Counted from the stretch's first letter, positions 21,351-42,466 are shown. The stretch: DNA of 64,000 nucleotides from IMGVR_UViG_3300045961_000282:124001-188000; one strand, 5' to 3'. Made by a program: numbers and translations. Notes: generated by a model not told the origin, from the sequence alone.

Positions 21351-21506
21351 CTACCAGTCACTCTGGGGGGCGTTGGGGCTGCCCAGAACCCAGAACGTGG
21401 CTTCGCGATCACTCATGCCTGCCCTGCGCGCCCTGCGAATCGCGAACAAGTCGCGCCAGCGCACGTGGGGCCAGACCTCGCCAGTCGCGCTGTTGATGAT
21501 CTCCAT
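21351..21506 (-). CDS. 51-aa ORF in a class-II leader cassette (not in the ORF track)
   Basis: TATAGT -10, TGAGCAGGGGAGAGTCCCC leader, AAGGAG RBS, terminator at 21308-21340. Confidence 0.65.
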   Translation of the reverse strand: MEIINSATGEVWPHVRWRDLFAIRRARRAGMSDREATFWVLGSPNAPQSDW

Positions 21507-21729
21507 GGGGGCTATCTCCTTTGCGTGGGGGGTCAGGGGACTCTCCCCTGCTCACCTAGATAACTATACATGATTGGACTAGCAAAGGCTACCTTGGCAG
21601 GGGGCTGGGAGCCTGCGCCCCCACAGGAGTGGTGCTCACCTGAGGCAGGTTTGACACGTAACAATATCTAGTGCTAAGGTTGTACCAACAGCCCGGGGAA
21701 AGGCCCCGGGGACCTGAAAGGAAACACTC

Positions 21730-22056
21730 ATGGACTTCCTCGTCACCATCCTCGCGATCGTCGTTCTGTTCAAGGTTCTGGCGTGGATGTTCGACAAGGT
21801 GCTTGGCCCCTTCCTGCTGGCCATTCCGATTGGCATCGTGATCTACCCGTTCGTGCTGCTCTGGCAGTTCAGCCCCGTGCTGTTCGTGATCCTCGTTGTG
21901 GTCGTGCCCGCGCTGGTCGCCAAGCCCGCGTGGAACGCCTACAAGGAGAACCGCGAGATCAAGGCGCAGGCCAAGGCCATCGCATGGCGGCGCATGATGG
22001 AGAAGCATCAGGAGACCGTCCGCGAACTGGAGAGCAAGGGCATCCAGTTCAAGTGA
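21730..22056 (+). CDS. membrane protein
   Basis: TTGACA/TAAGGT promoter, GAAAGGA RBS, hydrophobic N-terminal two-thirds. Confidence 0.75.
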   Translation: MDFLVTILAIVVLFKVLAWMFDKVLGPFLLAIPIGIVIYPFVLLWQFSPVLFVILVVVVPALVAKPAWNAYKENREIKAQAKAIAWRRMMEKHQETVRELESKGIQFK

Positions 22057-22064
22057 TGCACCAA

Positions 22065-22103
22065 CAGAACCCCCACCGTCCACGGTCGACGGTGGGGGTT
22101 CTG
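22065..22103. terminator. intrinsic terminator hairpin
   Basis: cagaacccccaccgtc / gacggtgggggttctg perfect 16-bp stem. Confidence 0.8.
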
Positions 22104-22134
22104 CCGTCTCCACCGCGCTTGCTATGGTTCCCCC

Positions 22135-22635
22135 ATGAGCGACCTTCCCGTGACCCCGTACCCCGACCCGACCGGCATCAACACGGCGGGGTGGTCGGGA
22201 AGCGAGACCTCGCATGAGGCGGCATTGCATGCCGTGGTTTCCGGCGATGACCGTCGGGTGCAGGCCCGGGCCCTTCGCATGCTGGCCGCGGCCGGGCCCG
22301 ATGGGCTGACCTCGAAGGAGTTCGGCATCGCCACGGGCATCCATCACGGTCGCTCGTCCGGCGCGATGAGCGTGCTGCATCAGGCCGGACTGGTCGCCCG
22401 GCTCAGGGATCGCCGTGGCCGCTATGAGATCTACGTGCTGCCCGATGAGGTGCGAGGCCGCAAGGTGTCGACCCGGCGGCACAACAAACCCAAGAGCGCC
22501 GCGGACTACAAGCGGGGATGGGATGAAGGTCGCGCCGAACTGCTGTCGATCCTCGCCGGGATGTCTCAGGAGGAGCGGGACTTCATCATCGAGCGGGCCG
22601 CGGCGCTGCATGACTCCCAGCCGCCGCTGTTCTGA
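22135..22635 (+). CDS. winged-helix DNA-binding protein
   Basis: GLTSKEFGIATGIHHGRSSGAMSVLHQAG HTH-wing; leaderless TATGGT promoter. Confidence 0.7.
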   Translation: MSDLPVTPYPDPTGINTAGWSGSETSHEAALHAVVSGDDRRVQARALRMLAAAGPDGLTSKEFGIATGIHHGRSSGAMSVLHQAGLVARLRDRRGRYEIYVLPDEVRGRKVSTRRHNKPKSAADYKRGWDEGRAELLSILAGMSQEERDFIIERAAALHDSQPPLF

Positions 22636-22716
22636 GCGTTTTGATTCTGCGCACCGCTAGTGCTATGCTTGATCCATGAGCGAGGGAGAGTCCCCCGCCT
22701 AGCGAAAGGGAACCCG

Positions 22717-22806
22717 ATGAACCCGTACACGATGGACCGAAGCCTGATCCGCTGGCTGGAAGGCCGCGAGGAGCCCGCCGAAGTGGAGCAGGACTGGGAG
22801 GACTGA
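22717..22806 (+). CDS. 29-aa acidic peptide in a class-II leader cassette
   Basis: Own promoter, leader, RBS and terminator (22815-22849). Confidence 0.55.
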   Translation: MNPYTMDRSLIRWLEGREEPAEVEQDWED

Positions 22807-22876
22807 TTCCCCCGGAAAGCCCCGGTTCCCGAAAGGGACCGGGGCTTTCGTATGCCCACCGCCGTATGATTGCCTG

Positions 22877-23794
22877 ATGACCAACGACACCCCCCGCAAG
22901 GCGCCCAAGATTGCCGCGGCGCGCGAGATTCTCTGGAACGCGGGATACAGCGGCCTGACGTGGCGCGACTACGCCGATGCGACCGGCGCCCACCATGGTG
23001 CGGCCTCCGGGATGCTGTCCCGGCTGCATCGCGATGGCGATGCCCTGCGGCTGGCCGAGAAGCGGGGCGCGGATTCGGTCTACGTCGCGCCGGAGTTCCG
23101 AATCAACCGGGATATTGTTCCGCCGAAGAAGCGCGCCGCGGAGCCGATCGCTCCCCTCCCCGTGGCTTCCGAGACTCCCCCGGCCATCGACATGGACGCC
23201 GTGTGGCGCGATGCCTACGCCGAGGGCGTGGCCGCCGGTCGCGCGCACGAGCGGACGATGGCCGAGAACGCCCGGGCTGAGCACGATGAGGCGATCCGGC
23301 TGGCCGGGTTCGCCGAGGGCGTGGCGCAGGGGGTGGCCGACCTCGAGGCCGCCCGAAGCGCGGCGTTCGCCGACGGGGTGGCCAAGGGCCGAGCCGACGC
23401 CCCGCCAACCGAGGATGCCGAGGCGGCCCGCCGGGAAGGCTTCGAGGCCGGTCGCGCGCAGGCCGAGGCCGAGTGGCAGGCCGGGTATGACGAGGGCGTC
23501 AAGGTCGGCGGCGACATCGCAATCGCGGAGATGAAGCAGCGGATGGTCGACGCCGGGGGCGAGCCGTACCTCAAGGGCCGCGCCGTGGGGCGCAAGGAGG
23601 GCGAGGAGGCGCTTCGGCGCCATGCGACCAAGGTGGCTGCCGAGATCGCCCGGGCCATCCGGGCCAACGGGTCTCCGGTCAAGACGCACCACAGCACGTG
23701 CTGGATGCAGCACCCGGAGTGCGCCGTGAAGGCCGTGGTGCAGGGCATCGGGGTGACGCCGGATCGGTTCCGCTCCGAGGTCAATGTCGCCTGA
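22877..23794 (+). CDS. winged-helix protein (paralog of 22135) with AxxxG coiled-coil repeats
   Basis: GLTWRDYADATGAHHGAASGMLSRLHRDG; repeated YAEG/FAEG/FEAG. Confidence 0.7.
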   Translation: MTNDTPRKAPKIAAAREILWNAGYSGLTWRDYADATGAHHGAASGMLSRLHRDGDALRLAEKRGADSVYVAPEFRINRDIVPPKKRAAEPIAPLPVASETPPAIDMDAVWRDAYAEGVAAGRAHERTMAENARAEHDEAIRLAGFAEGVAQGVADLEAARSAAFADGVAKGRADAPPTEDAEAARREGFEAGRAQAEAEWQAGYDEGVKVGGDIAIAEMKQRMVDAGGEPYLKGRAVGRKEGEEALRRHATKVAAEIARAIRANGSPVKTHHSTCWMQHPECAVKAVVQGIGVTPDRFRSEVNVA

Positions 23795-23854
23795 CTTGAC
23801 GCCGTTCCAGGAGTCGTGCTAAGGTTGTACCAACACCACGACGAAGGGAACATC

Positions 23855-23983
23855 ATGAAGACCTGCTACAACTGCGACGAGGCCCTCACCGGCCCGGTCA
23901 AGACGATCGGCGACTACGTGTGGGACGAGGTGGACGGCGAGGTGCACGAGGAGTTCCTCGTGCACGTCACCTGCCCCGCCTAG
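23855..23983 (+). CDS. 42-aa CxxC peptide
   Basis: TTGACG/TAAGGT promoter, A/C leader, RBS and terminator (23991-24032). Confidence 0.6.
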   Translation: MKTCYNCDEALTGPVKTIGDYVWDEVDGEVHEEFLVHVTCPA

Positions 23984-24038
23984 CGGGCACGCAAAAGGCC
24001 CCGGAACCCGAAAGGGAACCGGGGCCTTTTGCGTTGCC

Positions 24039-24389
24039 TCAGGCCTCGACGTGCTCCGGGGCCGGGGGGTTGTTCACGATGTAGGCATCCATGACGTGCT
24101 TCGGGATGCGGCCCCGATCCGGGACCGGCAGGCCGTTGGCCCGTGCCCACTGCCGGACCTCGCTGCCACCCTTCGAGCGGCGCTTGCCCGTGCGTGCGCG
24201 ACCGGCGATCGGGGTGCTGGTGGTCGGGCGGCCCGCGGCGATGAACGGGGCCAGCGCGTTGGCCAGCATCTCGCGGTTCGCCGCGCCGAGGTCGATCTCG
24301 TAAGACTTCCCGTCAAGGGCGAACGTCACGAGACGAACGCCGTCCTCGCTTCCATCGAGGTCGTCGATCTTCACCTGTCGCATTGCCAT
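24039..24389 (-). CDS. lsr2: Lsr2 nucleoid-associated protein / xenogeneic silencer
   Basis: DDLDG, FALDGKSYEIDL, VRQWARANG..V.DRGRIP. Confidence 0.95.
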   Translation of the reverse strand: MAMRQVKIDDLDGSEDGVRLVTFALDGKSYEIDLGAANREMLANALAPFIAAGRPTTSTPIAGRARTGKRRSKGGSEVRQWARANGLPVPDRGRIPKHVMDAYIVNNPPAPEHVEA

Positions 24390-24884
24390 CGTCATTCTCC
24401 TGTCGCTTTTTGGTGGGTGGTGGAGAAACAATATCGGACCCCACTGACATCGCGCGAGATGACATCACCACTTCAGCAGGATTCCGAGGAACAGGAACAC
24501 CCCCCATCCGAGCAGGAACACGGTCAGCAGGGCCATGTCGTCCTCGTGGTCGCGCTTCATGGACCGGAACCCTACACGCGCTGCTATGCTGGTGCCTTAA
24601 TTTGATTGGTTGGGCGAACCGGGACAGGCTTGGCTCCGCGTGTAGGAAGCCGGAGCGCTTTGCAAGGTCAGAGCATTTGACGTTTGACCTAGATTCCCGC
24701 CGCTCCCCGGGGAGCCAAGGCCCCGGCGCCTCATTCGAACGAGGTTGCCGGGGCCGCCTCATGCGCGCGACCGGCCCCGGTGGGGCAAACAAGCATTGGA
24801 CACCGATCCCGAACCCTCCCTAGAGTGAGTGCTGCCCGCGCTGGAACGCGGGCAGCACGAGCCCACCTAGGCAGAGGTGAACTG

Positions 24885-25586
24885 ATGACCAGTATGACCT
24901 GTTCGATCGACGGGTGCGACAAGCAAGCGCAGAAGCGCGGGTGGTGTATGGCGCACTACTCTCGATGGCACCGTCACGGGGACCCGCTCAAAGGCGGTCC
25001 CTCTAGGCAGTCGAGCGATGCTGTGACCTGTTCGGTCGATGGATGCGAGAAGAAGGTCCAGAGGCGCGGGTGGTGCGCGGCGCACTACACGCGATGGCGT
25101 CGCCATGGTGACCCGCTCAAAGGTGGCCCGACGATGCGTCCCAAGGACGTGCTCATCGAGGAGTGGTTTTGGACGCAGACCAAACCAAACGGCGACTGCC
25201 TTGACTGGACGCTGGAGACGAACAATCAAGGCTACGGACACTTCACATGGGACGGCGAAAACTGGCGCACCCATGTGTTCTCATGGCTCGTCACCAACGG
25301 ATCTACCAACGGCCTACAGGTTCTCCATCGCTGTGACCGACCGATGTGCGTGAACCCCGATCACCTGTGGCTTGGCACCATCTCCGACAACATGCGGGAC
25401 AAGGTGGAAAAGGGGCTTCAAGCACGAGGTTTCGCCCTGCCTCACACCAAACTATCCGATGATGATGTGCGCGAACTTCGCCTGCTGTGGGCGACCGGAA
25501 CGCTGTCGCAACAAGAAATAGCCTCCCAGTTCAGGATAACCGCGCCCTACGTATCTTTGATCGTGAACATGAAGCGGCGCCGGTAA
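24885..25586 (+). CDS. HNH homing-type endonuclease with a duplicated N-terminal zinc module and a C-terminal HTH
   Basis: CSIDGC..RGWC..HY.RW.RHGDP x2; VLHRCDRPMCVNPDHLWLGT..DN. Confidence 0.9.
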   Translation: MTSMTCSIDGCDKQAQKRGWCMAHYSRWHRHGDPLKGGPSRQSSDAVTCSVDGCEKKVQRRGWCAAHYTRWRRHGDPLKGGPTMRPKDVLIEEWFWTQTKPNGDCLDWTLETNNQGYGHFTWDGENWRTHVFSWLVTNGSTNGLQVLHRCDRPMCVNPDHLWLGTISDNMRDKVEKGLQARGFALPHTKLSDDDVRELRLLWATGTLSQQEIASQFRITAPYVSLIVNMKRRR

Positions 25587-25587
25587 G

Positions 25588-27432
25588 TTACCGCCTGCCC
25601 TTGTACGGAGAACGTTTTCCGAGGTTCGCTGCCCCTAGTGGCGGCAACCGATAGGCAGACATTGAGCGGGCACGCAGATTAGAATTGACGGCAAATGAAG
25701 CGCCCTTGACCTTGGTGGTGAGGGCCAGCGACGCCCAGACCATCGCGTCGAGACGTCCCGGAGATACCTTGGATTCCGCGGGGACCCATGAGGTGATCTC
25801 GGATTCCAACAGCGGGTGGTAGTTCAGCATATGCAGGCGGCCCTGCTCAGCAAGGGCCGCCACCGGCTCGGCGCGGGTTGCCTTGCCTGCTCGGGCGTGC
25901 ACGATGTAGACCGGCACGTTGGCATTCACCTGTCCGATGGCCATGCGGACCAGTTCGCCGCCCTGATTCCCCTCGGCCACCACTGGGCCGCCCCACTTGA
26001 TCGCCATGTCCACGACCCGCTTGGCCCAGACCGCCGGGCTGCCCAGCACGGTCGCATCCTCCACGACGTAGAGTTGGCGGCGGTAGAAGTCCCGCTCGGC
26101 GGTTCCCTTCACCACCACGATGCCCGCCTCGTCCTTGGGGCGCTCAGCAACACTGGGATCGACCCCGATCACCGTGTGCATCTTGATCCCGCCCGGCAGT
26201 TCGGTCACCCGTGCCGCATCGAGGTCGGACTGCATGAACAGCGCGCCCTCGATGTCGTGCAGCATCTCGCCCATCAGTTCCTGCTGGCCGATCCGGGTCC
26301 CTTCGTACAGGCCGAGGATCGTGGCGCGGAAGGACTGCGCAAGGTTGGCGAGGTTGTCATATGTCGTTCCACGGGTGATGACGATGCCGAACTCAGGATT
26401 CTCGGATTCCTCCAGCAGTTGGAACATCGAGGGAACGCGTCGCGGCGTGGTCGTGGCAACCATACGCGGCATGTCGCCATCAACCGGAAGTCGTAGACCC
26501 AGCCGCAAGTTGGCGAACGCCGTCAGACCATCGGCGCCGGAGACCTGCGGGTAGGAAGCAAACTCGTCGCAGTTGTGAATCAAGACTCCGGCGGCATAGA
26601 ACTCCGGCGCTCCGTTGATCGTGAGGTCATAGACATTGGCTCGACCCGCCGGGCGCACGGAAGCAACAGGAAACAGGGTGGTGCTCGAGTCTGTGCTGAG
26701 GCGGACGTGAACCATATCCCCGGCCTCGAGGTCGGCGGCCTGAACCCACGTGTCCCGCCTCGATTCGCTCGCCACCAACACGAGGTGATCGGGGGTGCAG
26801 CGCAATGTCGTCGGCCCGGCCTCGATCTCCACCACCTCGCGGTCGGTTCCCGTGCGCTGTGCGCGCGCGACCGGCCAGAAGCCGGAACGGGTGAGCACTT
26901 TCATCCCCGGCTGGATCTGTTCGATGGGCAGCGGCCCCAGCGAGGTGAGTACCGGCTCCCCTTCGGCTACGCACCACGCGGTGTCGAACTGGGGACCACG
27001 CAACTGGTCCGGCTCGTCGGCGGAGAAGGCCAATGCATACGCGCCGTTCGGCCACGACACCCGGCGCTTGGATGGCTCCCAGACGGGTACCTCGCCGGGT
27101 CGGGAGGACTCGATGATCCCCGACGGGCCGTTGACCATGACATCGCGGACGTCAGCAGCGGTGCGGCCCAGCAGCGCGATTCGCCTGCCGTGGCCATCGC
27201 GGACCCGTTCATTGATCCACTCAGCGGCGGTTCTCGTTTTCCCCCAACCCCGCCCTGCCATCGCCAGCCAAAGCACCCAGTCTCCGGACGGAGGGGTCTG
27301 GGAGGGCCTCCTCCAGAAGGCCCAATCGTGTATCAGCGACTCGGCATCAACCCCTTCAAGGGTCGCCTCGCGCTCCTCAGGGGGAAGCAGGGCGATGCGT
27401 TGGGCCATCGAGAGTTCGTGGCCGTAGGTCAT
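25588..27432 (-). CDS. terL: terminase large subunit (intein-containing)
   Basis: Walker A AGRGWGKT; LRGPQF..W-[intein]-CDEFA Walker B; TTTP; nuclease GVDPS, DEAGIVV and DAMVWA; leaderless TATGGT promoter. Confidence 0.92.
   Translation of the reverse strand: MTYGHELSMAQRIALLPPEEREATLEGVDAESLIHDWAFWRRPSQTPPSGDWVLWLAMAGRGWGKTRTAAEWINERVRDGHGRRIALLGRTAADVRDVMVNGPSGIIESSRPGEVPVWEPSKRRVSWPNGAYALAFSADEPDQLRGPQFDTAWCVAEGEPVLTSLGPLPIEQIQPGMKVLTRSGFWPVARAQRTGTDREVVEIEAGPTTLRCTPDHLVLVASESRRDTWVQAADLEAGDMVHVRLSTDSSTTLFPVASVRPAGRANVYDLTINGAPEFYAAGVLIHNCDEFASYPQVSGADGLTAFANLRLGLRLPVDGDMPRMVATTTPRRVPSMFQLLEESENPEFGIVITRGTTYDNLANLAQSFRATILGLYEGTRIGQQELMGEMLHDIEGALFMQSDLDAARVTELPGGIKMHTVIGVDPSVAERPKDEAGIVVVKGTAERDFYRRQLYVVEDATVLGSPAVWAKRVVDMAIKWGGPVVAEGNQGGELVRMAIGQVNANVPVYIVHARAGKATRAEPVAALAEQGRLHMLNYHPLLESEITSWVPAESKVSPGRLDAMVWASLALTTKVKGASFAVNSNLRARSMSAYRLPPLGAANLGKRSPYKGRR
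26572..26973 (-). mobile_element. 134-aa mini-intein (no homing endonuclease)
   Basis: Starts CVAEG; block B CTPDH; ends VYDLT...IHN followed by Cys+1. Confidence 0.92.
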
Positions 27433-27504
27433 GGGGCGAACCATATCCCGCCGTCTCGGGTGTCAACCGCGGTTCATGCTCGATTCACGCGCGATGAATC
27501 CCGC

Positions 27505-28464
27505 TCACCAGTCCCGCACCGGCACCATCGCTCGCCCGATCAAGTAGGTCCCCGCCTCGGTGTGGATGTCGACGTACTCCTTGGGTTCGATGTCGGCGCT
27601 GGCATGGACGTAGTAGGCCGGGCGCACCTCGTTCGGGCGCTTGTTCGGCGCCGCCGCGCGGGCCACGGCGAGGTCGATGTCCCGCAGGTACATCCGCACC
27701 GGGTCGATCAGCACGCGGGTCAACGACTGGGTTGAGTTGTGCACCGCCGAGGACCGCCAGCCCAGTGAGGTCGCCACCTCGGCCAGTGCGTTGACGATCT
27801 CAGGGCGCCGGGAGCGGATCACGACGTGGCGGCGCAGGCCGCGGTTGAACACACCCTTGCCATCGAGCGCCCCGGCCATCAAGTCACGGCGCACCTCCAC
27901 AGGCGCCCGCCGGTACGCGAGCGCGACCGGCTCGGAGAAGGCGTCGATGCGATGCAGCCGCTCCAGCAGCCCATCGACGTAGAGGTAGGCGTGCTTGCCG
28001 TGGGCAGTGCGGCGGCGAACCTTCAGGCCGCGGGCCTCGATCATCTCGGCGGCCCGGTCGGCGAGATTGGCCGGAACCGACACCGCATCCTCGATGCCGG
28101 TGGTCCGCCACAAACCATACGTCCACGGATCGAGCGGCGGCCCGGCCTCGAGCCAGTCCTCGGGGATCTCCCCGATGAGCGCGATCCGCTCGGTCACCAC
28201 CGGGTCGCGGCGCTCGGCCTCGCCGGGCCACGCCTTCATCGACACCCACGCAGTTCCCAGCACGAGGTCGTGGTCGGTCGAGCAGCGGATCGGCGGGCCG
28301 GAGATCCGCAGTTCGGTGGCTCGGGGCGGGGTCTCGCGGGCTACGCGCGCGACCGGGGTCGGCTTGCCGGAGGAGTCATAGAGCAGGTCGCCGGGAGCCG
28401 CGCGCCACGCCTCGATCCATCCGGTCGGGGAGACCAGCGGGGTCTCGGGATGGATGCTCGGCAT
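27505..28464 (-). CDS. free-standing intein-like Hint + degenerate LAGLIDADG protein without exteins
   Basis: Block A SIHPETPLVSPTGW..GDLLYD..GKPT; block B STDH; LDPWTYGLW and RRDLMAGALDGKG; TYLIGRAMVP block F/G; own leaderless promoter. Confidence 0.75.
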   Translation of the reverse strand: MPSIHPETPLVSPTGWIEAWRAAPGDLLYDSSGKPTPVARVARETPPRATELRISGPPIRCSTDHDLVLGTAWVSMKAWPGEAERRDPVVTERIALIGEIPEDWLEAGPPLDPWTYGLWRTTGIEDAVSVPANLADRAAEMIEARGLKVRRRTAHGKHAYLYVDGLLERLHRIDAFSEPVALAYRRAPVEVRRDLMAGALDGKGVFNRGLRRHVVIRSRRPEIVNALAEVATSLGWRSSAVHNSTQSLTRVLIDPVRMYLRDIDLAVARAAAPNKRPNEVRPAYYVHASADIEPKEYVDIHTEAGTYLIGRAMVPVRDW

Positions 28465-28641: not shown

Positions 28642-28743
28642 GAGGAAGGAGGCTACCTGCTCGTGTTGATTCTGTCAGCCCCCTTGTGCTATGCTTATTC
28701 CTGTGAGCGAGGGAAAGTCCCTCCCCAACGAAAGGAAACCCCC

Positions 28744-28923
28744 ATGCAGGTGAACGTCCCGGTCCCCTTCCCCGGCACTGCCGAGGAACGCGCCGCCAAC
28801 CGCGCGACCCACTTCTTCGGCGGGATCGACGGGCGGTGCTTCGACTGCGACAGCCGCCCCACTCACGTGGCCGCCGACTACCCGTGCTGTGTCGAGCCGC
28901 CACGGATGTGGATCACCCGCTGA
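28744..28923 (+). CDS. 59-aa Cys-containing peptide in a class-II leader cassette
   Basis: Promoter, leader, RBS and terminator; CFDCD. Confidence 0.6.
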   Translation: MQVNVPVPFPGTAEERAANRATHFFGGIDGRCFDCDSRPTHVAADYPCCVEPPRMWITR

Positions 28924-28998
28924 CCCGATAGAGAACCCCCTCGACCAGATACCGGTCGGGGGGGTTTTCTGTGCTCGCCTCCGTGAGCCGCCGCCAGC

Positions 28999-30042
28999 CT
29001 ACCGCCAGAACTCGGGCACGGAGTGGTCGTGGTCCGTGCGGCGACACCACGGCGACGCCTCGCGCCACTTGTGGGCGTAGGACAGCGGCTCGTCGGTGTA
29101 GTCGTCGTAGTCCATCCCTTGGTGCTCGCACCACGCTCGATGCGCCGCCCGCGTGCACTCGGGGCGGGTCCACTGGCCCAGCCCCCGCAGCAGCGCCCGC
29201 ACCTCACGTGCGCGCGACCGGTGGGCTGGGGTGAACGTGCACGCCTCGACCACCAGTTCGTGGTGCATCGACCCCGGGATGGGCCGGGTGTCGGATTCCT
29301 CCCAGTTATAGCAGTCCGGCGGCAGGGCGCCCTTGCGCCACATCGTCACCGCCGTCATCCGGCTCGGCCCCCACTCGTGGTGCAGCCGCATGAACAGGGC
29401 GTCCACCGCGTCGAACGTGTTGCGGTTGACCCACTTGTTCTCCTTGCGCGGGATGGTCATGCCCGCCCGCTCCTCGAGGATGTCCTCGGTCCAGCCCAGC
29501 GCCATCAGTGCGCGGACCTGCCACAGCGTCCACTCCGCCGGGAACCGCTTGGCGTCGCGAACCATAAGGGCCGGGTTGGACTTCACCTTCTCGACCGTCA
29601 GCAGCAGCGTGCGTTCCGTGCTGCGCGCGACGTTGACCCGGCCCGGCGTGAGCACGCGGTCCAGCGCCCGGCGCTCCATCCCGGAGATGGCCTCGATCTG
29701 GGTCCACCGCAGGCCCTGCCCCCGCAGCCACGTCAGGGCCTCGACCGACGTCGCTGCCGGAACCCGGTCGTAGTCGCTGGGTATCCCCGCCTTCAGGCGC
29801 GCCCGACGCGCTCGCCACGTTTCCGCGTGGGCGTCCTTGCAGGGGCGACAGCGGCAGCCAAGTGAGTAAGAACTCTGTGACGGTGCGCTACATGTAAAGT
29901 CTTCATCTGTGCTCAAAGTTCCCCAACCTACTTTCTCTGGTCTGAACTTGTGTACGCTATCGTTGCCGCTGTTCACAGTGAAACAGGAGGTCGGCCATGA
30001 GTTATCCATGCGAGGTCGAAGGTTGCCATCGGGGAGATGCAT
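28999..30042 (-). CDS. phage DNA-binding protein (GCRC..C zinc motif plus HTH-like segments); true start probably near 29.9 kb
   Basis: YSLGCRCRPCK, WTQIEAISG and QVRALMALGW pattern seen in actinophage proteins. Confidence 0.6.
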   Translation of the reverse strand: MHLPDGNLRPRMDNSWPTSCFTVNSGNDSVHKFRPEKVGWGTLSTDEDFTCSAPSQSSYSLGCRCRPCKDAHAETWRARRARLKAGIPSDYDRVPAATSVEALTWLRGQGLRWTQIEAISGMERRALDRVLTPGRVNVARSTERTLLLTVEKVKSNPALMVRDAKRFPAEWTLWQVRALMALGWTEDILEERAGMTIPRKENKWVNRNTFDAVDALFMRLHHEWGPSRMTAVTMWRKGALPPDCYNWEESDTRPIPGSMHHELVVEACTFTPAHRSRAREVRALLRGLGQWTRPECTRAAHRAWCEHQGMDYDDYTDEPLSYAHKWREASPWCRRTDHDHSVPEFWR

Positions 30043-34754: not shown

Positions 34755-35156
34755 ATGACGGTGACGGTTATGGTTGTTCAGCAGGATCTGACCCTCTGGC
34801 ACCTGCACAGTGCGTGCGCCGACCCGGACATCTCCGCCGACATATGGTTTGACGACGCCGACACCGCGCGCCGGATCTGTGGTCGCTGCCCCGTGCGCAA
34901 CGCCTGCCTGCAATATGCGATGGACGTCGAGGCTGACGGCGAACGGCTGCATGGAGTGTGGGGCGGATTGAGTCCCATCCAACGGCAGCGACTGCGCGAG
35001 AATCCCGAATCGCTGGATCGAATGCGCCGCGTGAGGTCCAAGACCCGGCTGCGCTCCCTGCCCTCACCGCGGATCAAAGCCGAGCAGCCACAACCGAAGC
35101 ACGAACTCCACCCCGTCCAACTGACCCTGATTGATTTGACTCAGCACACCGCCTAG
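34755..35156 (+). CDS. whiB: WhiB-family Fe-S transcription factor
   Basis: C...ARRICGRCPVRNACL.YA...GVWGG. Confidence 0.92.
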   Translation: MTVTVMVVQQDLTLWHLHSACADPDISADIWFDDADTARRICGRCPVRNACLQYAMDVEADGERLHGVWGGLSPIQRQRLRENPESLDRMRRVRSKTRLRSLPSPRIKAEQPQPKHELHPVQLTLIDLTQHTA

Positions 35157-35217
35157 CGTATAGTTGTTCCTGTGAGCGAGGGAAGGACCCTCGCCCGAAT
35201 GAAAGGGAACAACCACC

Positions 35218-35364
35218 ATGAGCAACAACAACCGCCGCCCGCAGGCCTCCAAGCGCAACCGCGACGAGGCCTACCACAAGGCCTACGACCTCTGGGCCGC
35301 CGAGCAGGCCTACCAGCAGATGCTGGAGGAGTGGGAGCAGGACCTGCTCTACACCGAGCACTGA
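35218..35364 (+). CDS. 48-aa peptide in a class-II leader cassette
   Basis: Promoter, leader, RBS and terminator (35373-35408). Confidence 0.6.
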   Translation: MSNNNRRPQASKRNRDEAYHKAYDLWAAEQAYQQMLEEWEQDLLYTEH

Positions 35365-35413
35365 GGCAAAAAGCGAACCCCCCGTACCGAACTGGTACGG
35401 GGGGTTCGTCGTC

Positions 35414-35809: not shown

Positions 35810-35970
35810 GGGTCCTCACGGGAAAAGGGGAGAGCCCCAGTCTACGGGGGGGTCGACTGGGGCTCTCAGGCCGGACGAACGAAGTGTCCCTGATCGACGG
35901 GGGAGCAGATCTGGGTCCTTCATGAGTTCGTGCCGAACAAAAGGAATGCTAACCGAACCCCGCGCTGGGG

Positions 35971-36868: not shown

Positions 36869-37528
36869 TGGGGTGCTCCTTCGTTGGTAGTGGTTGTTGT
36901 TTCACGCAATAGTAGCACCCCGCGCGAGGTCAGGACGAGGAGGCCCTCGCCGCCAACCGTGCCGCGCGCTCAGCCAACTGCGCCTCTCGAGCCGCCCGGC
37001 GCGTCTCGCGCTCCTTCTGCTCGCGCAGTGCGGCGGACATCGATGGGGACTTGGGATCCCACGAACGGACATTGGGAGAGGTGCTGACGGCCATGTTCGA
37101 CTCCGATGCGTGGAAGGTGGGGCGTCCCTGCGTCAGGTCAAGGATACGGATGTCGGGGACGCTGCACCCGGCGATTCCCTACCCTGCCGTGCATGAAGCC
37201 ACAGGATCTGGCCGCCGATGTCCTGTACCTGTCCCTTGCCGTCCCGGTCGCGCTCGCGATGCACGTGGCCATCGGCGCAGTGGAGGGGATCGAGTGGCTC
37301 AAGAGCCTGCGTCCCTGACTGCCGCCGGGGTCGGCGCGCTGGCCGGAGTGATCGCCGCCGCCCTCGCTGGGTACGTCGTGGCCGAGCGGGTGACGACGTG
37401 GATGAGTTCTGTCATGTCCCCGTCGCAGACTGGTTCCAGCACGGATTAGGTGATCCGCACTAGTTCGTGTAGTCTTATTCCTGTGAGCGAGGGAAGTGCC
37501 CCGCTCCTGATCCCTGAGGAGGGACCCC

Positions 37529-37801
37529 ATGTACGAGACCTACGAGGCCGCGATCGACGCGATTCAGGCGCTCATCGACGAGCCGTCCGTCCGTGACGAC
37601 GAGGTTGCCCAGTGCGAGGACTGCCTCCGCTACGGCGACGCTGAGAGCGACGACATGCGCTACGAGGACGAGCCGGGCGTCTGGCAGTGCGAGGAGTGCG
37701 CCGAGGCGTGGCACCGCCAGTGCATCGCGGACGCGCTCTACGACGTGCGCGGTCGCCTCGACTGGCAGGAGCGCACGGGGCGGCTGACTCTCTCCGTCTG
37801 A
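37529..37801 (+). CDS. acidic zinc-ribbon protein in a class-II leader cassette
   Basis: CEDC and CEEC; promoter, leader, RBS and terminator. Confidence 0.7.
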   Translation: MYETYEAAIDAIQALIDEPSVRDDEVAQCEDCLRYGDAESDDMRYEDEPGVWQCEECAEAWHRQCIADALYDVRGRLDWQERTGRLTLSV

Positions 37802-37886
37802 CCCCCCACGGCCCCCCGCTTCGGCGGGGGGCTTTCCCGTGCCCGCCTCGCGTGTGTGCGCGACCGGCGTTGCTAGGCTGCCGAGC

Positions 37887-38117
37887 ATGGCGCACCTCGA
37901 ATACTCCGAGCACTGGGCACGGCTGACTGAGCAGCGGCACGACGCCTACATGGACGCCCTGTACCAAGCGGCGCAGGACGGCGAGGACATGGAAACCCTG
38001 AGCGGCATCCCGTTCTGCGGCGAATGCTCAGAGTGCGAGCGCAGGGAGTCATGGGTGTTCCTGATGATGGAAGCCGTGAAGGCGCACCGCTGCGGGATAT
38101 TGAATCTCGTCGAATAG
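37887..38117 (+). CDS. hypothetical CxxCxxC protein (leaderless)
   Basis: TGC-TAGGCT 7 nt before the ATG. Confidence 0.6.
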   Translation: MAHLEYSEHWARLTEQRHDAYMDALYQAAQDGEDMETLSGIPFCGECSECERRESWVFLMMEAVKAHRCGILNLVE

Positions 38118-38598: not shown

Positions 38599-38810
38599 TC
38601 CGCCCTGAGCAGCCCGAGCCCATCGAGGGGCTCTACGACGCCTTCTACGCCGTTGCCCTGCGCGGCAGGGAACTGGGCTCCGGCCCCTTCGATGGCGCGC
38701 TGTCCACCCTGCCCGATGGAGTGGTGGAGTACCTCGTTGCCATGAACATCCCCGTCGAGAACGCCAAGGGGATCGCCATGGGCATCGCCATCGGGCGGCT
38801 GCTTCCATAG
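38595..38810 (+). CDS. hypothetical protein
   Basis: GTGA overlap. Confidence 0.55.
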   Translation: MIRPEQPEPIEGLYDAFYAVALRGRELGSGPFDGALSTLPDGVVEYLVAMNIPVENAKGIAMGIAIGRLLP

Positions 38811-38993
38811 GCGCACACACGCGCGCACCACCGTCAAGAGCGCCCGCACCGTCAAGGTGAAGTGACCCTGAACCTTCCCAAGAAGGCCCCCGCTTCGGCG
38901 GGGGCCTTCGTCGTCTCCGAGAGTTGCTGTTCCTGAGGTTCCTGTGCTATGGTTTACCTACCAACACAACCACCACCACGAAAGGAGGCCCTC

Positions 38994-39443
38994 ATGAGGG
39001 ACGCAGTGATCATCGACGTTGATGGCACCCTTGCGAACGTCTCCGGCATTCGACATCACGTTCGTAAAACTGCGGATCATCCCTTCAAGGACTTCTCGAA
39101 GTTCCATGCCGAGAGCGTCGATTGCCCGCCGAACGAGCAGGCCGTGGCCATCGCCCGCGAGGCGCACGAGGCCGGGCTGGCCGTGCTGATCGTCACCGCC
39201 CGCCGAGCGATGTGGCGCCACCACACCGCGTGGTTCCTCGCCCTGCACGACATCCCCAGCGACGCGCTGTTCATGCGCGGCAACGACGACCACCGCCGCG
39301 ATGTCGAGGTCAAACGCGACATCCTCGCCCAGATCCGCACCCGGTGGAACCCGGTGCACGCCGTGGACGACAATCCAAGCATTTTGGCGCTCTGGGCCTC
39401 CGAGGGGATTCCGACCACCGTGATCCCCGGCTGGGAGGACTGA
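38994..39443 (+). CDS. HAD-family phosphatase (PseT/polynucleotide 3'-phosphatase-like)
   Basis: IIDVDGTLA, IVTAR, LFMR..D.R.D..VK, AVDDNP. Confidence 0.85.
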   Translation: MRDAVIIDVDGTLANVSGIRHHVRKTADHPFKDFSKFHAESVDCPPNEQAVAIAREAHEAGLAVLIVTARRAMWRHHTAWFLALHDIPSDALFMRGNDDHRRDVEVKRDILAQIRTRWNPVHAVDDNPSILALWASEGIPTTVIPGWED

Positions 39444-39456
39444 GTACCATATCTTT

Positions 39457-40029
39457 ATGGACCGAGTCGTTATGTGTTCCTACTGTGGCGAAAAGCCAAT
39501 AAAGGCTAATGGTCTGTGCTCTGGACATGCAGAGCAAATGCGATTAGGCAAGGAACTTAGGCCACTAGGCCGCAGGCGGCTCTGGTGGAATCCTGAATCC
39601 GTTCTGATCGACTACTCCAAACGCGATGCAGAAACAGGTTGTCTCATCTGGACCGCTGTCAAGAATCAGGCTGGATATGGCCTCTGCACCCTCGGCCTCG
39701 CTCACCGCGTCTCCTACAGAACATGGGTTGGCCCGATCCCCGAGGGCCTCTACGTCCTTCATCACTGCGACAACCCGCCATGCATCGAGCCGACTCACCT
39801 CTACGCCGGAACGCAGGCCGACAACATGCGGGACATGTACGCGCGCGACCGGCAACGACACTCTCCCCGACCCGGCGAAGCGAACCCCGCCGCGAAACTG
39901 ACCGAGGCGCAGGTGCTTGCCATCCGTGCCGACACCCGACCACAGCGCGCCATCGCGAAGGACTACAGGATCACGCAAGCGATGGTCAGTCTCATCAAGC
40001 GTCGAGAGAAGTGGACACACCTGCCATAG
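39457..40029 (+). CDS. HNH homing-type endonuclease
   Basis: AHRVSY, VLHHCDNPPCIEPTHL.AGT.ADN, KLTEAQV.AIR. Confidence 0.9.
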   Translation: MDRVVMCSYCGEKPIKANGLCSGHAEQMRLGKELRPLGRRRLWWNPESVLIDYSKRDAETGCLIWTAVKNQAGYGLCTLGLAHRVSYRTWVGPIPEGLYVLHHCDNPPCIEPTHLYAGTQADNMRDMYARDRQRHSPRPGEANPAAKLTEAQVLAIRADTRPQRAIAKDYRITQAMVSLIKRREKWTHLP

Positions 40030-40082
40030 ACGTGCTATGGTTTACCTACCAACACAACAACCACCAGAAAGAAGGAACTTCA

Positions 40083-40217
40083 ATGAAGTGGACTGGGGCA
40101 GATGATGTCCTTGCCGAGATACGCCGCGTCAACATCGCCTACCTCGAACACGAACTGCTCGACCCCCCGTACCTGCACACGGACCTGTGCAGGATCTGCT
40201 TCCCGCGCATCCGCTGA
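40083..40217 (+). CDS. 44-aa peptide
   Basis: Promoter and leader nearly identical to those at 38945; RBS. Confidence 0.55.
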   Translation: MKWTGADDVLAEIRRVNIAYLEHELLDPPYLHTDLCRICFPRIR

Positions 40218-40236
40218 CTCGACTGAGAGGAGTGAC

Positions 40237-40431
40237 ATGAAAACCGGCTTCGAGAACTACCACACCGATGCCCTCGCGTGGTGGGTGTGGCACATGGACA
40301 ACGACGGCTGCGAACGCTGCCCGGACGGCACCTCCCCCGAGGTCGCCGAGCGGGTCCGCGCCGAGTGGGCCACCCGCTCACAGGTCCTGCCCCGGCACCT
40401 GCGGGACGGGCGGTTCGACCGCATCCGCTGA
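40237..40431 (+). CDS. 64-aa hypothetical protein
   Basis: RBS GAGGAG. Confidence 0.55.
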   Translation: MKTGFENYHTDALAWWVWHMDNDGCERCPDGTSPEVAERVRAEWATRSQVLPRHLRDGRFDRIR

Positions 40432-40612
40432 CCAGCGCCCCGGCTTCCTCACGGAGGTCGGGGCGCTCTCGTGTGTACGTGCGCGCGACCGGCTCGTCGA
40501 TCGCTCGAGCCCCACCTCGACGACTTCGGGGGTCGTATGGTTCGGTTTGCATTAGGGCACCGCGGTCTGTATAGTTGTAGCCATCACCACCACCACGACG
40601 AAAGGAACTGAC

Positions 40613-40843
40613 ATGGTGAAGATTGAGTTCGAGACGAACAACGAGGCGTTCGCCGACGCCCCCGGCATCGAGATCGCCCGCATCCTGCGGCGGCTCGCCG
40701 ACACGCTGGAGCCTGCCATGGGCGGCGACTGGGGACCCCTGCTCATCAAGGACACCCTCGGCAACACGGTGGGCGCCGCGCGGGTGCAGGTGTGCCGCTC
40801 CGACTGCCTGCTGGCCGACGGTCACCCCGGCGAGTGCGTCTGA
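40613..40843 (+). CDS. hypothetical protein
   Basis: TTGCAT/TATAGT promoter, A/C leader, RBS; NEAFAD..EIARIL..D.LGNTVG pattern. Confidence 0.7.
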   Translation: MVKIEFETNNEAFADAPGIEIARILRRLADTLEPAMGGDWGPLLIKDTLGNTVGAARVQVCRSDCLLADGHPGECV

Positions 40844-40918
40844 GTTTGACATGGGCAGGCGATAGGCGTAATGTTAGTCATGTAAGAACAACAACACCAC
40901 AGAGAGAGCGAGAATGAG

Positions 40919-41146
40919 ATGACGTTCACGATGGACCTGCGCGGTTCGGGGGTCTACTCCTACGACGAGGAAGTCGCCATCGAGTGTGAGTGCGGCTCCA
41001 CGGAGGGCACCCGGTTCGTTGACGACTGGAAGGTCGCAGTAGTCACCTGCGACAACTGCCAGATGGAGCAGCCCGAGGAGGACGACGAGGACCCCGACTA
41101 CGCGCGGGACCTTTGGTTGGAGCAGGAGTACGAGGACCGCTACTGA
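40919..41146 (+). CDS. acidic zinc-ribbon protein
   Basis: CECG and CDNC; TTGACA promoter. Confidence 0.65.
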   Translation: MTFTMDLRGSGVYSYDEEVAIECECGSTEGTRFVDDWKVAVVTCDNCQMEQPEEDDEDPDYARDLWLEQEYEDRY

Positions 41147-41256
41147 CCCCGAAGGCCCCCGGGAAACCGGGGGCCTTCGTCATTGCCGCGTTTGACGTTT
41201 GACACAACGGGCATACTGGAATGAGCACGACCACCAACAACACGAAAGGACCACCT

Positions 41257-42222
41257 ATGAGCATCCGCACTGACACCTATGCGCTGGCCACGTCGGCTGG
41301 CCGCAAGCCCGGCACGCCGGGCCACGACGACGCGGTGGCCTACCTGCGCTGCCGCTTCGCCGACCTCGACCTGCTTCCCTACAGGGACACCGACGACTGG
41401 GAGCACTCCTACACCGCCAAGGCGCGCGGCAGGCGCGTCACCATGACCAACCTGATCGGCGTGATCCCCGGCACCGACCGCACGCTGGCGCCCATCGTGA
41501 TCGGCGCGCACTATGACTCGGTGATCGAGTCCTACTGCGCCGACGACAACGCCTCGTCCGTGGCAGTCGTCCTCAACGTGGCCGAGCGCCTGAGCGCCGC
41601 GCCCCTGCGCCGCGACGTGGTGATCGCCGCGTTCGATGGTGAGGAACCGCCGTTCTTCCACTCTCCCGCGATGGGATCGACCCGTCTGGTGGAGGACGTG
41701 CTGGGCGAGGTCCACCTTGCCATCGTCATGGACCTGATCGGCCACCCGACCACACTACCCGGCACCGACCCGCACCTGTCCGTGGTGACCGGCGTCGAGT
41801 CGCACCCGAACCTGCGCAGCGCGCTGATCGGGGTTGACCTGCCGCTGCTGGTCGTGGACAACAAGCGGGTCGGCGACATGAGCGACCACCACGCCTTCCG
41901 GCTGGCGGGCAAGCCGTTCCTGTTCCTGTCCTCCGGCGAGTGGGAGCACTACCACACCGAGGACGACCTGCCCGAGTACCTCGACTACACGAAGTTGCAG
42001 CGGGTCGCCGATGCTGTCGAGCGGTTCGCCCGCAACGCCGACGTGGTGGAACTGGGCGCTGCGCAGCCGCACGACATTGAGGACTTGGAGGCGGCGCGCT
42101 TCGACACCCACCTGCCCGCCGACCTCATCGAGCCGCTGCGCCACGGGGTGTCCACCCGCGAGGCCCTGCCGTACATCATCGGCGGACTGCGGGCGTCGAT
42201 GTGGGGCGAGCGGTTCGCCTAA
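41257..42222 (+). CDS. M28-family metallopeptidase
   Basis: GAHYDS, ADDNASS, FDGEE, MDLIG, SDH..F, YHT.DD. Confidence 0.88.
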   Translation: MSIRTDTYALATSAGRKPGTPGHDDAVAYLRCRFADLDLLPYRDTDDWEHSYTAKARGRRVTMTNLIGVIPGTDRTLAPIVIGAHYDSVIESYCADDNASSVAVVLNVAERLSAAPLRRDVVIAAFDGEEPPFFHSPAMGSTRLVEDVLGEVHLAIVMDLIGHPTTLPGTDPHLSVVTGVESHPNLRSALIGVDLPLLVVDNKRVGDMSDHHAFRLAGKPFLFLSSGEWEHYHTEDDLPEYLDYTKLQRVADAVERFARNADVVELGAAQPHDIEDLEAARFDTHLPADLIEPLRHGVSTREALPYIIGGLRASMWGERFA

Positions 42223-42301
42223 CTTGCTCTCTGCCACTGGCAGCGGTATAGTTGTCGGTGTGAGCGAGGGAGAGTCCCCCGCCGAACCGGAAGGAAACCT
42301 C

Positions 42302-42466
42302 ATGGCGAAGAACAGGGTGCCCGCGGGCGCCACGGCCAAGACGCCCGCGCAGGTGCAGGCCACTCTGGCCCTGCGCACCAGCGGAGCCAGCGGGCGGCAC
42401 GACTCGCGCCCGAAGCGGGCCAGAACCCGCGCCGCCAGCAAGCGTGCGGCCCTGCGGGAGTTCTAG
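42302..42466 (+). CDS. 54-aa basic peptide in a class-II leader cassette
   Basis: Promoter, leader, RBS and terminator; R/K-rich. Confidence 0.6.
   Translation: MAKNRVPAGATAKTPAQVQATLALRTSGASGRHDSRPKRARTRAASKRAALREF

What the first reader, a model, noticed from the sequence alone, without database searches (positions are those of the whole stretch)
21351..42466. Six single-peptide cassettes share one 5' stem-loop leader
Seen: TGAGC(G)AGGG(A/G)..AG.CCC starts 7-8 nt after a -10 at 21536(-), 22677, 28704, 35173, 37484 and 42261. The 5' arm is conserved and the 3' arm co-varies (GAGGGA-AAG-TCCCTC; GAGGG-AAGGA-CCCTC; GCGAGGGA-GAG-TCCCCCGC). Each drives one 29-90 aa ORF followed by its own terminator, often inserted against the local gene direction; four of these ORFs are missed or mis-started in the ORF track. 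Inference: a co-regulated regulon of small effectors (host-takeover or anti-defence peptides) with a stabilising or protein-binding 5' hairpin.
Basis: partly seen in the sequence, partly recalled or inferred. Interest (0 to 1): 0.62.

Follow-up and report, generated by a model that had tools for sequence, protein, structure and literature searches.

The report
Shared hairpin leader on phage mini-genes
A 206-kb uncultured phage of actinobacteria carries seven small stand-alone gene units, each with the same short hairpin at the predicted start of its messenger RNA; this resembles known phage promoter-plus-stem-loop cassettes and is probably a 5' RNA element whose action is untested.

Summary
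TGAGCGAGGGA, or a close variant, lies 7-8 nt after a SigA-type -10 hexamer at all six listed sites. A seventh, weaker copy lies at w47310. Each site forms a 6-9 bp G/C hairpin. Each has a 40-49 nt leader with a Shine-Dalgarno sequence, one ORF of 29-90 aa with coding-type GC3, and a strong terminator hairpin.

The window is part of a 206-kb metagenomic actinophage. That genome also has about 19 similar promoters with unstructured CA-rich leaders, so the hairpin marks a subset.

The same leader occurs in two metagenomic relatives. One copy sits on an extra cassette that this genome lacks. A p5 orthologue in the other relative carries the CA-rich leader instead. Similar leaders occur once per genome in a ~60-kb IMG/VR phage group and, more weakly, upstream of gp11 in cultured Arthrobacter cluster AL phages. 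There they drive 120-186 aa proteins. Stems co-vary and loops vary.

Best reading: moron-like or PeSL-like expression modules with a 5'-terminal RNA hairpin that sets mRNA stability or expression. A +1 DNA operator remains a serious rival. The anti-defence effector idea is untested. No RNA data exist.

The parts
21563..21591 (-). s1 promoter: weak -35 (TAGCCT), 17-nt spacer, -10 TATAGT
21507..21555 (-). s1 leader. Predicted +1 is the G at 21555. Hairpin CAGGGGA-GAG-TCCCCTG at 21550-21534. Shine-Dalgarno AAGGAG.
21351..21506 (-). p1, 51 aa, GC3 0.85
21303..21345 (-). p1 terminator hairpin (-36.5 kcal/mol) followed by TTTTGCTTG
22641..22669 (+). s2 promoter TTGATT-N17-TATGCT. It begins 6 nt after the stop codon of the MarR-type gene.
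22676..22716 (+). s2 leader. Hairpin at 22680-22698 with an A.C mismatch.
22717..22806 (+). p2, 29 aa, GC3 0.87
22815..22849 (+). p2 terminator (-31.0 kcal/mol)
28666..28695 (+). s3 promoter TTGATT-N18-TATGCT
28703..28743 (+). s3 leader. Hairpin GAGGGA-AAG-TCCCTC at 28709-28723.
28744..28923 (+). p3, 59 aa, Cys-rich, GC3 0.90. It is opposite in direction to both neighbouring genes.
28928..28972 (+). p3 terminator (-35.2 kcal/mol). It is usable in both directions.
35136..35164 (+). s4 promoter TTGACT-N17-TATAGT. It overlaps the 3' end of a WhiB-like gene.
35172..35217 (+). s4 leader. Hairpin GCGAGGG-AAGGA-CCCTCGC at 35176-35194.
35218..35364 (+). p4, 48 aa, GC3 0.98
35373..35409 (.). Terminator after p4 (-35.3 kcal/mol). 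Its T-run is better on the - strand, so it is shared with the convergent gene.
37446..37475 (+). s5 promoter: GGATTAGGT-type -35 region and -10 TAGTCT
37483..37528 (+). s5 leader. Hairpin at 37485-37506 with a bulged A. A second small hairpin holds the Shine-Dalgarno sequence.
37529..37801 (+). p5, 90 aa, CxxC..CxxC. It has two homologues and dN/dS of 0.39-0.61.
37810..37833 (+). p5 terminator (hairpin within a 60-nt fold of -31.4 kcal/mol)
42224..42252 (+). s6 promoter TTGCTC-N17-TATAGT
42260..42301 (+). s6 leader. Hairpin at 42264-42282, identical to that of s2.
42302..42466 (+). p6, 54 aa, very basic, GC3 0.93
42478..42508 (+). p6 terminator (hairpin within a 60-nt fold of -34.7 kcal/mol)
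47310..47367 (+). Its upstream region is paralogous to that of s5.
47368..47601 (+). p7, 77 aa, GC3 0.92. No homologue was found.
47602..47641 (+). p7 terminator hairpin (-31.1 kcal/mol)
21651..21729 (+). Hybrid unit. The promoter has a CA-rich start, but a similar hairpin CCCGGGG-AAAGG-CCCCGGG lies at about +12. It drives the 108-aa gene and the MarR-type gene.
   Evidence: 14.2 bits

Best explanation
The sites are autonomous expression modules of the moron or PeSL kind in a jumbo actinophage.

Each module has a host SigA-type promoter, a leader whose first roughly 25 nt fold into a G/C hairpin, a Shine-Dalgarno sequence, one fast-evolving ORFan, and an intrinsic terminator. The hairpin has a 3-5 bp outer stem, often an unpaired A, a GGG/CCC inner stem and a loop of 3-5 nt.

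Shown: the anatomy, the copy number, the covariation, the constant position after the -10, and the modular exchange of leader and cassette between related phages.

Inferred: transcription starts at the purine just before TGAGC. On that basis the hairpin lies within about 5 nt of the 5' end and acts in the RNA. It would shield the 5' end from 5'-end-dependent decay (RNase J or RNase E type). Together with the 3' terminator hairpin it would give short, stable single-gene mRNAs. That would set this subset apart from the ~19 promoters with unstructured CA-rich leaders.

The shared promoter-leader sequence probably also serves as a recombination joint that moves such units between phages.
For: - Motif, promoter geometry, ORFs and terminators.
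- The hairpin is present in all 14 compared copies. In the 27-28 nt MFE folds it begins 0-5 nt after the purine that lies 6-9 nt past the -10, and this holds with three different promoter types.
- Pairing and compensatory changes: 77.5% paired against 34-54% when slid, with 4 double-change pairs. In the Laroyevirus orthologues 97.6% are paired against at most 59.5%, with one A-U to G-C change and a G-C to C-G flip, while loops and flanks vary.
- Between the orthologous s5 and L013 leaders the hairpin is 19/23 identical, and the GA/AG swap merely moves the bulged A, while the flanks diverge. dS of the gene is 0.59.
- A leaderless-type gene, w37887 and its L012 orthologue, has its ATG 7-8 nt after its -10. 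That is the same geometry that puts +1 at the purine before TGAGC.
- Bulges, register shifts and strict orientation fit an RNA stem better than a symmetric operator.
- Modularity: L012 has an extra cassette and a swapped leader on the p5 orthologue. The ~60-kb group combines a Laroye-like promoter with this leader.
- The ORFs are ORFans.
Against: - There are no transcript data, so the 5' end is only predicted.
- Single hairpins are modest. z is -0.2 to -2.6 against whole-leader shuffles and p is 0.005-0.11 per site.
- Compensatory changes preserve a DNA palindrome just as well as an RNA stem.
- No G.U pair occurs in the core stem, so nothing is RNA-specific.
- The sequence, not only the pairing, is conserved (GAGC, GGG/CCC). 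A purely passive stabiliser would not require that.
- The hybrid promoter at w21651 carries the hairpin at about +12, too far from the 5' end to cap it.
- The links to the 60-kb group and to Laroyevirus rest on short matches plus context. About 0.5 chance hits were expected for the pattern (my own scaling from the 11 chance hits). The Laroye match scores 13.3 bits, E 0.05-0.3.
Confidence: 0.48

Rival explanations
1. The inverted repeat is a double-stranded DNA operator over +1 to +25. It would be bound by a dimeric phage regulator that switches these seven promoters off or on as a temporal class. One candidate is the MarR-type protein at w22150-22635, which lies between s1 and s2.
For: - The repeat is an inverted repeat of 17-22 bp with similar half-sites (GCGRGGG), found only at promoters.
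- Loops, which would be the operator's central spacer, vary freely while the arms are conserved.
- Sequence, not just pairing, is conserved.
- Regulator genes sit next to cassettes: MarR_2 before s2, a WhiB-like gene before s4, an HTH protein after p6, and a GerE-type protein near the L012 cassette.
- The hairpin of the MarR operon's own promoter lies at about +12. That suits an operator better than a 5' cap.
Against: - Arm spacing is not fixed. Copies differ by a bulged A, an A.C mismatch and one- or two-nt register shifts.
- The element is always in one orientation.
- It stays at the same distance from the -10 across three promoter types.
- The same element occurs in phage groups that share no detectable proteins in the held loci, so a shared phage repressor is not evident.
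Confidence: 0.22
2. The conserved promoter-leader block is mainly a recombination joint, as in the PeSLs of T4-like phages. It would be kept alike by exchange between copies, and the hairpin would have no role of its own beyond being part of a working promoter module.
For: - An extra cassette is present in L012 and absent here.
- The leader class is swapped on p5 orthologues.
- A chimeric promoter-plus-leader occurs in the 60-kb group.
- PeSLs include a subclass with a polyG/polyC stem-loop just downstream of the -10, and they flank ORFans (PMC2839356).
Against: - The -35 to -10 spacers of the copies share no similarity, while the hairpin is kept. Gene conversion alone does not explain the pattern.
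- Stems co-vary.
- The apparent break-points of the L012 insertion lie at the terminators, not at the leader.
Confidence: 0.15
3. The RNAs start with 5'-GUG or AUG and are read as leaderless mini-ORFs (Met-Ser-Glu-Gly...). Translation of the mini-ORF, or its blockage by the hairpin, would control the main ORF.
For: - A purine followed by TG lies exactly where +1 is predicted in all nine copies of the G000 kin and in the 60-kb group.
- Leaderless translation from 5'-RUG is common in mycobacteria (PMC4633059; bioRxiv 10.1101/834739).
- In s6 the GTG is in frame with p6.
Against: - Mini-ORF lengths are 6 to 125 codons, with non-coding GC3 (0.50-0.61) in the long ones.
- The Laroyevirus copies start with AUC or ACC, not RUG.
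Confidence: 0.07
4. The hairpin is a nut/boxB-like site for a small arginine-rich antiterminator. p4 and p6 are basic and would be candidates. Binding would let transcripts pass the cassette terminators.
For: - The hairpin is a short G/C stem with a purine-rich pentaloop near the 5' end of early-type transcripts.
- p4 and p6 have arginine-rich stretches.
- The gene at w22877 has no obvious promoter of its own after the p2 terminator.
Against: - Loop sequence is not conserved.
- No boxA-like partner was seen.
- Read-through from p3 and p4 would run antisense to the neighbouring genes.
- No Pfam match to N-type proteins.
Confidence: 0.04

Closest known systems
PeSL (promoter-early stem-loop) cassettes of T4-like phages (PMC2839356; PMC4122927)
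   Same: Both are repeated composite motifs with a host sigma-70-type early promoter and a G-run/C-run stem-loop. One PeSL subclass has the stem-loop just downstream of the -10. Both are placed upstream of ORFans and interspersed among conserved genes. Both are associated with gain, loss and replacement of single-gene units between close relatives.
   Different: The phage lineage and host are different: an actinophage at 66% GC. There are only 7 copies, with a tightly conserved sequence. The stem-loop here lies inside the transcript start and has no U-run, and separate strong terminators follow each ORF. It is therefore unlikely to be the terminator that PeSL stem-loops were shown to be. Mini-circle formation was not tested.
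Phage morons (independent promoter-gene-terminator units inserted between phage genes; established knowledge)
   Same: Each unit has its own promoter, one small accessory gene and its own terminator. p3 is inserted against the flanking genes. The L012 cassette is present in one relative and absent in the other.
   Different: Morons are defined one by one and share no common leader. Here a family of them shares a 5' hairpin.
5'-terminal stabiliser stem-loops such as E. coli ompA and B. subtilis aprE or ermC (established knowledge, not tested here)
   Same: A stable hairpin lies within a few nt of the predicted 5' end, and a free Shine-Dalgarno sequence lies downstream.
   Different: The 5' end and the half-life effect are unmeasured. 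The sequence is conserved across copies, which a passive stabiliser does not need.
Repeats of actinophages: cluster A stoperators, cluster K start-associated sequences and the cluster O 17-bp palindrome (PMC4351075, PMC3203893)
   Same: All are short conserved repeats in intergenic regions of actinobacteriophages, presumed to be regulatory.
   Different: [quoted passage not shown] Stoperators are asymmetric sites spread through the genome. This element is a hairpin fixed at the transcript start of a few promoters.
Leader upstream of gp11 in Arthrobacter cluster AL phages (Laroye, Salgado, Edmundo, Waltz, Wheelbite, Shrooms, Kovu); unannotated in the records
   Same: TATAGT, about 9 nt, then AGC-A-GGGG/C, a 5-nt loop and CCCC-GCT, followed by a GGCC-AAGGA-GGCC Shine-Dalgarno hairpin as in L013. 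It heads genes inserted after the large terminase gene (PMC5513430 notes these insertions).
   Different: There is one copy per genome. There is no GTG at the start. It drives a protein of about 120 aa. The match to the model is weak (13.3 bits).

Membership tests
PeSL cassettes (T4-like phages) | Sigma-70-type early promoter consensus inside the repeat | tested here: met
   A -35 TTGAYT-like hexamer, a 17-18 nt spacer and a -10 TAnnnT at the six listed sites; s7 lacks a recognisable -35.
PeSL cassettes (T4-like phages) | PolyG/polyC stem-loop within the motif | tested here: met
   A GGG(G)/CCC(C) stem in all copies.
PeSL cassettes (T4-like phages) | The stem-loop acts as terminator for upstream transcription | tested here: inconclusive
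   There is no U-run after the hairpin and it lies downstream of the -10. Separate terminators of -31 to -36 kcal/mol follow the ORFs. Function was not assayed.
PeSL cassettes (T4-like phages) | Preferentially upstream of ORFans, with exchange of units between close relatives | tested here: met
   There are no family hits. p7 has no homologue and p5 has two. L012 has an extra cassette and a swapped leader.
PeSL cassettes (T4-like phages) | Recombination between copies gives mini-circles | not testable with these tools
   This needs inverse PCR or long reads from infected cells.
Moron | Own promoter and own terminator around one accessory gene, present in one phage and absent at the same place in a relative | tested here: met
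   Anatomy. The cassette L012:1914-2200 is absent between p5 and w37887.
5'-terminal mRNA stabiliser hairpin | Hairpin within about 4 nt of the real 5' end | tested here: inconclusive
   Predicted only, from the -10 spacing and from the leaderless geometry of w37887. No RNA run holds this genome.
5'-terminal mRNA stabiliser hairpin | Lengthens mRNA half-life | not testable with these tools
   This needs a decay assay.
Palindromic repressor operator (MarR-type) | Two like half-sites at fixed spacing | tested here: inconclusive
   The half-sites are alike, but spacing differs between copies through a bulge, a mismatch and register shifts.
Palindromic repressor operator (MarR-type) | Bound by a cognate regulator | not testable with these tools
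   Candidate genes lie at w22150-22635, w34755-35156 and w42580-43326.
lambda-type nut (boxB) | Conserved pentaloop sequence read by an arginine-rich peptide | tested here: not met
   The loops are GAG, AAG, AAGGA, AAGUG, ACAGG, AGAGG, AAUGG, AACCG, AGCCC and GCAGG.
Any Rfam family | Score at or above the family's gathering threshold | tested here: not met
   Nothing in w21000-48000 reaches a threshold.
Cluster K start-associated sequence | Short repeat closely linked to the translation start | tested here: not met
   The element sits at the 5' end of 40-49 nt leaders, well upstream of the ATG. The definition is taken from PMC4351075.

The most novel reading that the evidence does not exclude
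The hairpin is a specific cis-regulatory RNA, or RNA-DNA dual site, read by a host or phage factor. It would tag accessory 'moron' transcripts, and it would travel between otherwise unrelated phages of Arthrobacter-like hosts as a portable promoter-leader module. This would be an actinophage counterpart of PeSLs in which the stem-loop works at the 5' end of the message instead of as a terminator.
Probability: 0.22. Interest if true: 0.62.

Novelty: new variant of a known kind. Interest (0 to 1): 0.42.

Why it matters
If the hairpin is functional, it would be a compact expression signal that phages of high-GC actinobacteria attach to newly acquired small genes. It would help find and correctly start tiny genes that ORF callers miss. 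It would flag accessory genes worth screening. It could also serve as a portable leader for expression in Arthrobacter-like hosts. Cultured cluster AL Arthrobacter phages carry a probable copy, so the idea can be tested at the bench, even though the jumbo phage itself is known only from a sediment metagenome.

Tried and rejected
- **Near relatives in the phage collection.** Megablast of w21000-43000 found none. Blastn of the s4 leader also found none.
- **Pattern scans.** Scans of IMG/VR, JGI metagenomes and GTDB genomes gave only chance hits in unrelated, mostly low-GC contigs. The exception is the L012-type pattern, which found the 60-kb group.
- **Related loci by protein.** The p3 neighbour found nothing in IMG/VR. 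The large terminase found only distant 55%-GC phages without the motif.
- **Homologues of the p3 neighbour.** Contigs holding 50%-identical proteins have no such cassette.
- **Covariance model on other records.** The model found nothing in Arthrobacter phage Mimi, Microbacterium phage Big4, phage DSL-LC01, or the L014 and L018 records.
- **RNA evidence.** The only run holding the stretch is the DNA metagenome that is probably its source.
- **Host genomes.** Arthrobacter genomes could not be searched, because no genome handle was obtainable.
- **Shine-Dalgarno switch.** I considered that the C-rich 3' arm could alternate between the 5' arm and the Shine-Dalgarno sequence. Only s2 shows a competing fold, so I dropped the idea.
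- **Terminator for the opposite strand.** Rejected, because there is no T-run on either side.
- **Candidate trans factors.** KH and cold-shock domains and a sigma-70 region 2 protein are all absent.
- **Literature.** Searches for phiC31-type repeats gave nothing usable.
- **Protein-complex prediction.** Not used, because no protein-protein claim is made.

Full report
**Setting.** The window is bases 124001-188000 of a single 206,257-bp virus record with 65.7% GC. CheckV rates it 99% complete. The only sequencing run that holds it is a freshwater-sediment DNA metagenome.

The genome encodes an intein-bearing large terminase. Its nearest relatives are actinophages of Microbacterium, Gordonia and Arthrobacter, at 40-52% identity. 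It also encodes Lsr2-like and WhiB-like proteins. It is therefore a jumbo phage of an actinobacterium. No close relative exists in the cultured-phage collection.

**Check of the observation.** The core TGAGCGAGGG is exact at five + strand sites, and a variant lies on the - strand at w21554. Genome-wide, the 11-mer TGAGCGAGGGA occurs six times against 0.15 expected. Five copies are at promoters and one is an unrelated coding copy.

Each promoter copy lies 7-8 nt after a TAnnnT hexamer, with a -35-like hexamer 17-18 nt upstream. Each is followed by a hairpin, a Shine-Dalgarno sequence and an ATG 40-49 nt from the predicted start.

The six ORFs of 29-90 aa have GC3 of 0.85-0.98, like real genes of this genome. 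Each is followed within a few bases by a hairpin of -31 to -36.5 kcal/mol.

A covariance model built from eight leaders found a seventh, weaker copy at w47310-47355. It drives a 77-aa ORF with its own terminator. The same model gave a 14-bit match to a similar hairpin at about +12 of the promoter at w21651.

The hairpins are individually modest. Shuffling only the 3' tail gives p of 0.005-0.11 per site. They are consistent across sites, however. 77.5% of cells pair in the true register, against 34-54% when the partners are slid. Four pairs change on both sides, which 2 of 500 shuffles reach.

**Genome context.** The same genome has about 19 further SigA-type promoters, nearly all on the + strand. 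Their leaders are CA-rich and unstructured, and they too often head short units ending in terminators. The hairpin therefore marks a subset of otherwise similar promoters. The single-gene layout is not peculiar to that subset.

p3 is clearly inserted against both neighbours. p4 follows a co-oriented WhiB-like gene, and its terminator serves the convergent gene better than it serves p4. s2 begins 6 nt after a MarR-type gene.

**Relatives.** p5 is a real gene. It has two homologues with conserved CxxC pairs and a conserved C-terminal motif, and dN/dS is 0.39-0.61.

- On L013 (70% identity) the leader is of the same hairpin type. 19 of 23 hairpin bases are kept while the flanks diverge, and a GA/AG swap merely moves the bulged A.
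- On L012 the genes are syntenic at 56-86% amino-acid identity. There the p5 orthologue has a CA-rich leader instead. An extra unit follows it and is absent from the window. That unit consists of a promoter, TATAGT, the same 8-nt spacer, a perfect GCGGGG/CCCCGC hairpin, a 62-aa ORFan and a terminator.

A pattern taken from the L012 copy found six IMG/VR contigs of a ~60-kb phage group. These have one copy per genome, behind a different promoter, and it drives proteins of 148 or 186 aa.

The promoter of that group led to the cultured Arthrobacter cluster AL phages. These have a similar hairpin leader upstream of gp11, the first of the genes inserted after the terminase. PMC5513430 describes those insertions. 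In the cluster AL set the stems are invariant or change in compensating fashion, with 97.6% of cells paired, while the loops differ. The three groups share no detectable proteins in the loci I held.

These outside links rest on short matches plus identical context, and I rate them probable, not proven.

**Interpretation.** Across 14 copies the element has three constant features.

- Its first pair lies 0-5 nt from the predicted start in the MFE folds.
- It has an outer stem of 3-5 bp, then an A that is bulged, mismatched with C or paired with U, then three or four G-C pairs.
- Its loop is 3-5 nt long and free to vary.

The constant distance from the -10 under three different promoter types, the single orientation and the tolerance of bulges favour action in the RNA. 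The simplest such action is protection of the 5' end. Together with the terminator hairpin this would give short, stable messages.

A gene with leaderless geometry, w37887 and its L012 orthologue, has its ATG 7-8 nt after its -10. This supports placing +1 at the purine before TGAGC.

Against this reading, nothing seen is specific to RNA. Compensating changes keep a palindrome as well as a stem. Sequence as well as pairing is conserved, and regulator genes sit beside several cassettes. A +1 operator therefore remains a real rival.

The purine-TG at the predicted start would allow leaderless mini-ORFs (PMC4633059). Their lengths are erratic, though, and the Laroyevirus copies lack the start codon. 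A nut-like site is unlikely because the loops vary.

**Comparison with known systems.** Rfam has no match. The nearest described system is the PeSL cassette of T4-like phages. PeSLs combine a sigma-70-type promoter with a polyG/polyC stem-loop. One subclass has the stem-loop just after the -10. They flank ORFans and mediate modular shuffling (PMC2839356).

The present units work like that, and they fit the definition of morons. They are not members of the PeSL family, for three reasons: the lineage differs, the sequence differs, and the stem-loop lies inside the transcript start with no U-run.

The peptides themselves stay unexplained. p5 looks like a small zinc ribbon and p6 is very basic, but these are leads only.

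**Verdict.** The feature is real and was carefully observed. It extends to a seventh copy and to other phages. It is best read as a new actinophage variant of promoter-stem-loop or moron cassettes with a 5'-terminal hairpin. The mechanism is inferred, not shown. The 'anti-defence regulon' idea has no support beyond the small size of the proteins.

Noticed in passing
window ~21096(-), 23244(-), 24765, 28347, 29212, 30288, 31419, 33776, 34620, 36363, 37858, 39843, 40483, 43382, 45292, 46690(-), 47193, 49425, 51297, 54305, 57202, 63537, 63708: A third and more abundant repeat has the core GCGCGACCGG, usually preceded by (GTGT)ACGCGC. There are at least 25 copies. Many lie just after terminators. 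Several are followed after 30-50 nt by GGCCGTATGGTTCGCC, with a CTCGAG-type inverted repeat in between. It may be another promoter class or a small structured element.
   Followed up: partly
window 37858-37889; L012:2225-2270: TAGGCT or TAGGGT, then 6-7 nt, then ATG. This geometry is conserved in both phages and implies a leaderless mRNA for the gene at w37887-38117.
   Followed up: partly
window 21555, 22676, 28703, 35172, 37483, 42260, 47323: Every hairpin leader of this genome would begin with GUG (AUG in s2). In s6 this codon is in frame with p6, 14 codons upstream.
   Followed up: yes
window 25588-27444 (-) and 27505-28464 (-): The large terminase gene is interrupted by an intein (Hint and intein-splicing domain hits). 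The next gene has a weak homing-endonuclease match.
   Followed up: no
window 3714-5624 (-) and 5621-7654 (-): The phage carries a GlxA-like radical copper oxidase gene and a family-2 glycosyltransferase gene side by side. This resembles the cslA-glxA glycan pair of Streptomyces, which is unusual phage cargo (the comparison is from my own knowledge).
   Followed up: no
window 51644-54226 (+): An 860-aa MmeI-type fused restriction-modification enzyme. Distant homologues occur in Leptospira and Ralstonia phages.
   Followed up: no
window 22150-22635 (+), ~34755-35156 (+), 24039-24431 (-), 42580-43326 (+): Four regulator-type genes lie next to cassettes: MarR-type, WhiB-like, Lsr2-like and an HTH/sigma-70 region 4-like protein.
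   Followed up: partly
window 37446-37470 and 47286-47310; L038 promoter: s5, s7 and the 60-kb IMG/VR group share a GGATTAGGT/GGATTATGC block in place of a good -35 hexamer. It may be a binding site for an activator.
   Followed up: no
window 35826-35892 (-): A weak match to the actinobacterial 6C RNA: 30.8 bits against a threshold of 47, E 1.7. It is probably chance.
   Followed up: no
window 28999-30042 (-): Homologues align only from residue ~54 of the longest ORF. The real start is probably near w29880.
   Followed up: no
L018 (IMGVR_UViG_3300037193_000967), position 2033: A 47.7-kb phage contig carries a promoter and CA-rich leader whose -10 and leader are identical to the one at w23796. 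It also carries a further promoter family of its own (TTGACA-N18-TACGTT-AGTTAC/AGATRC).
   Followed up: no
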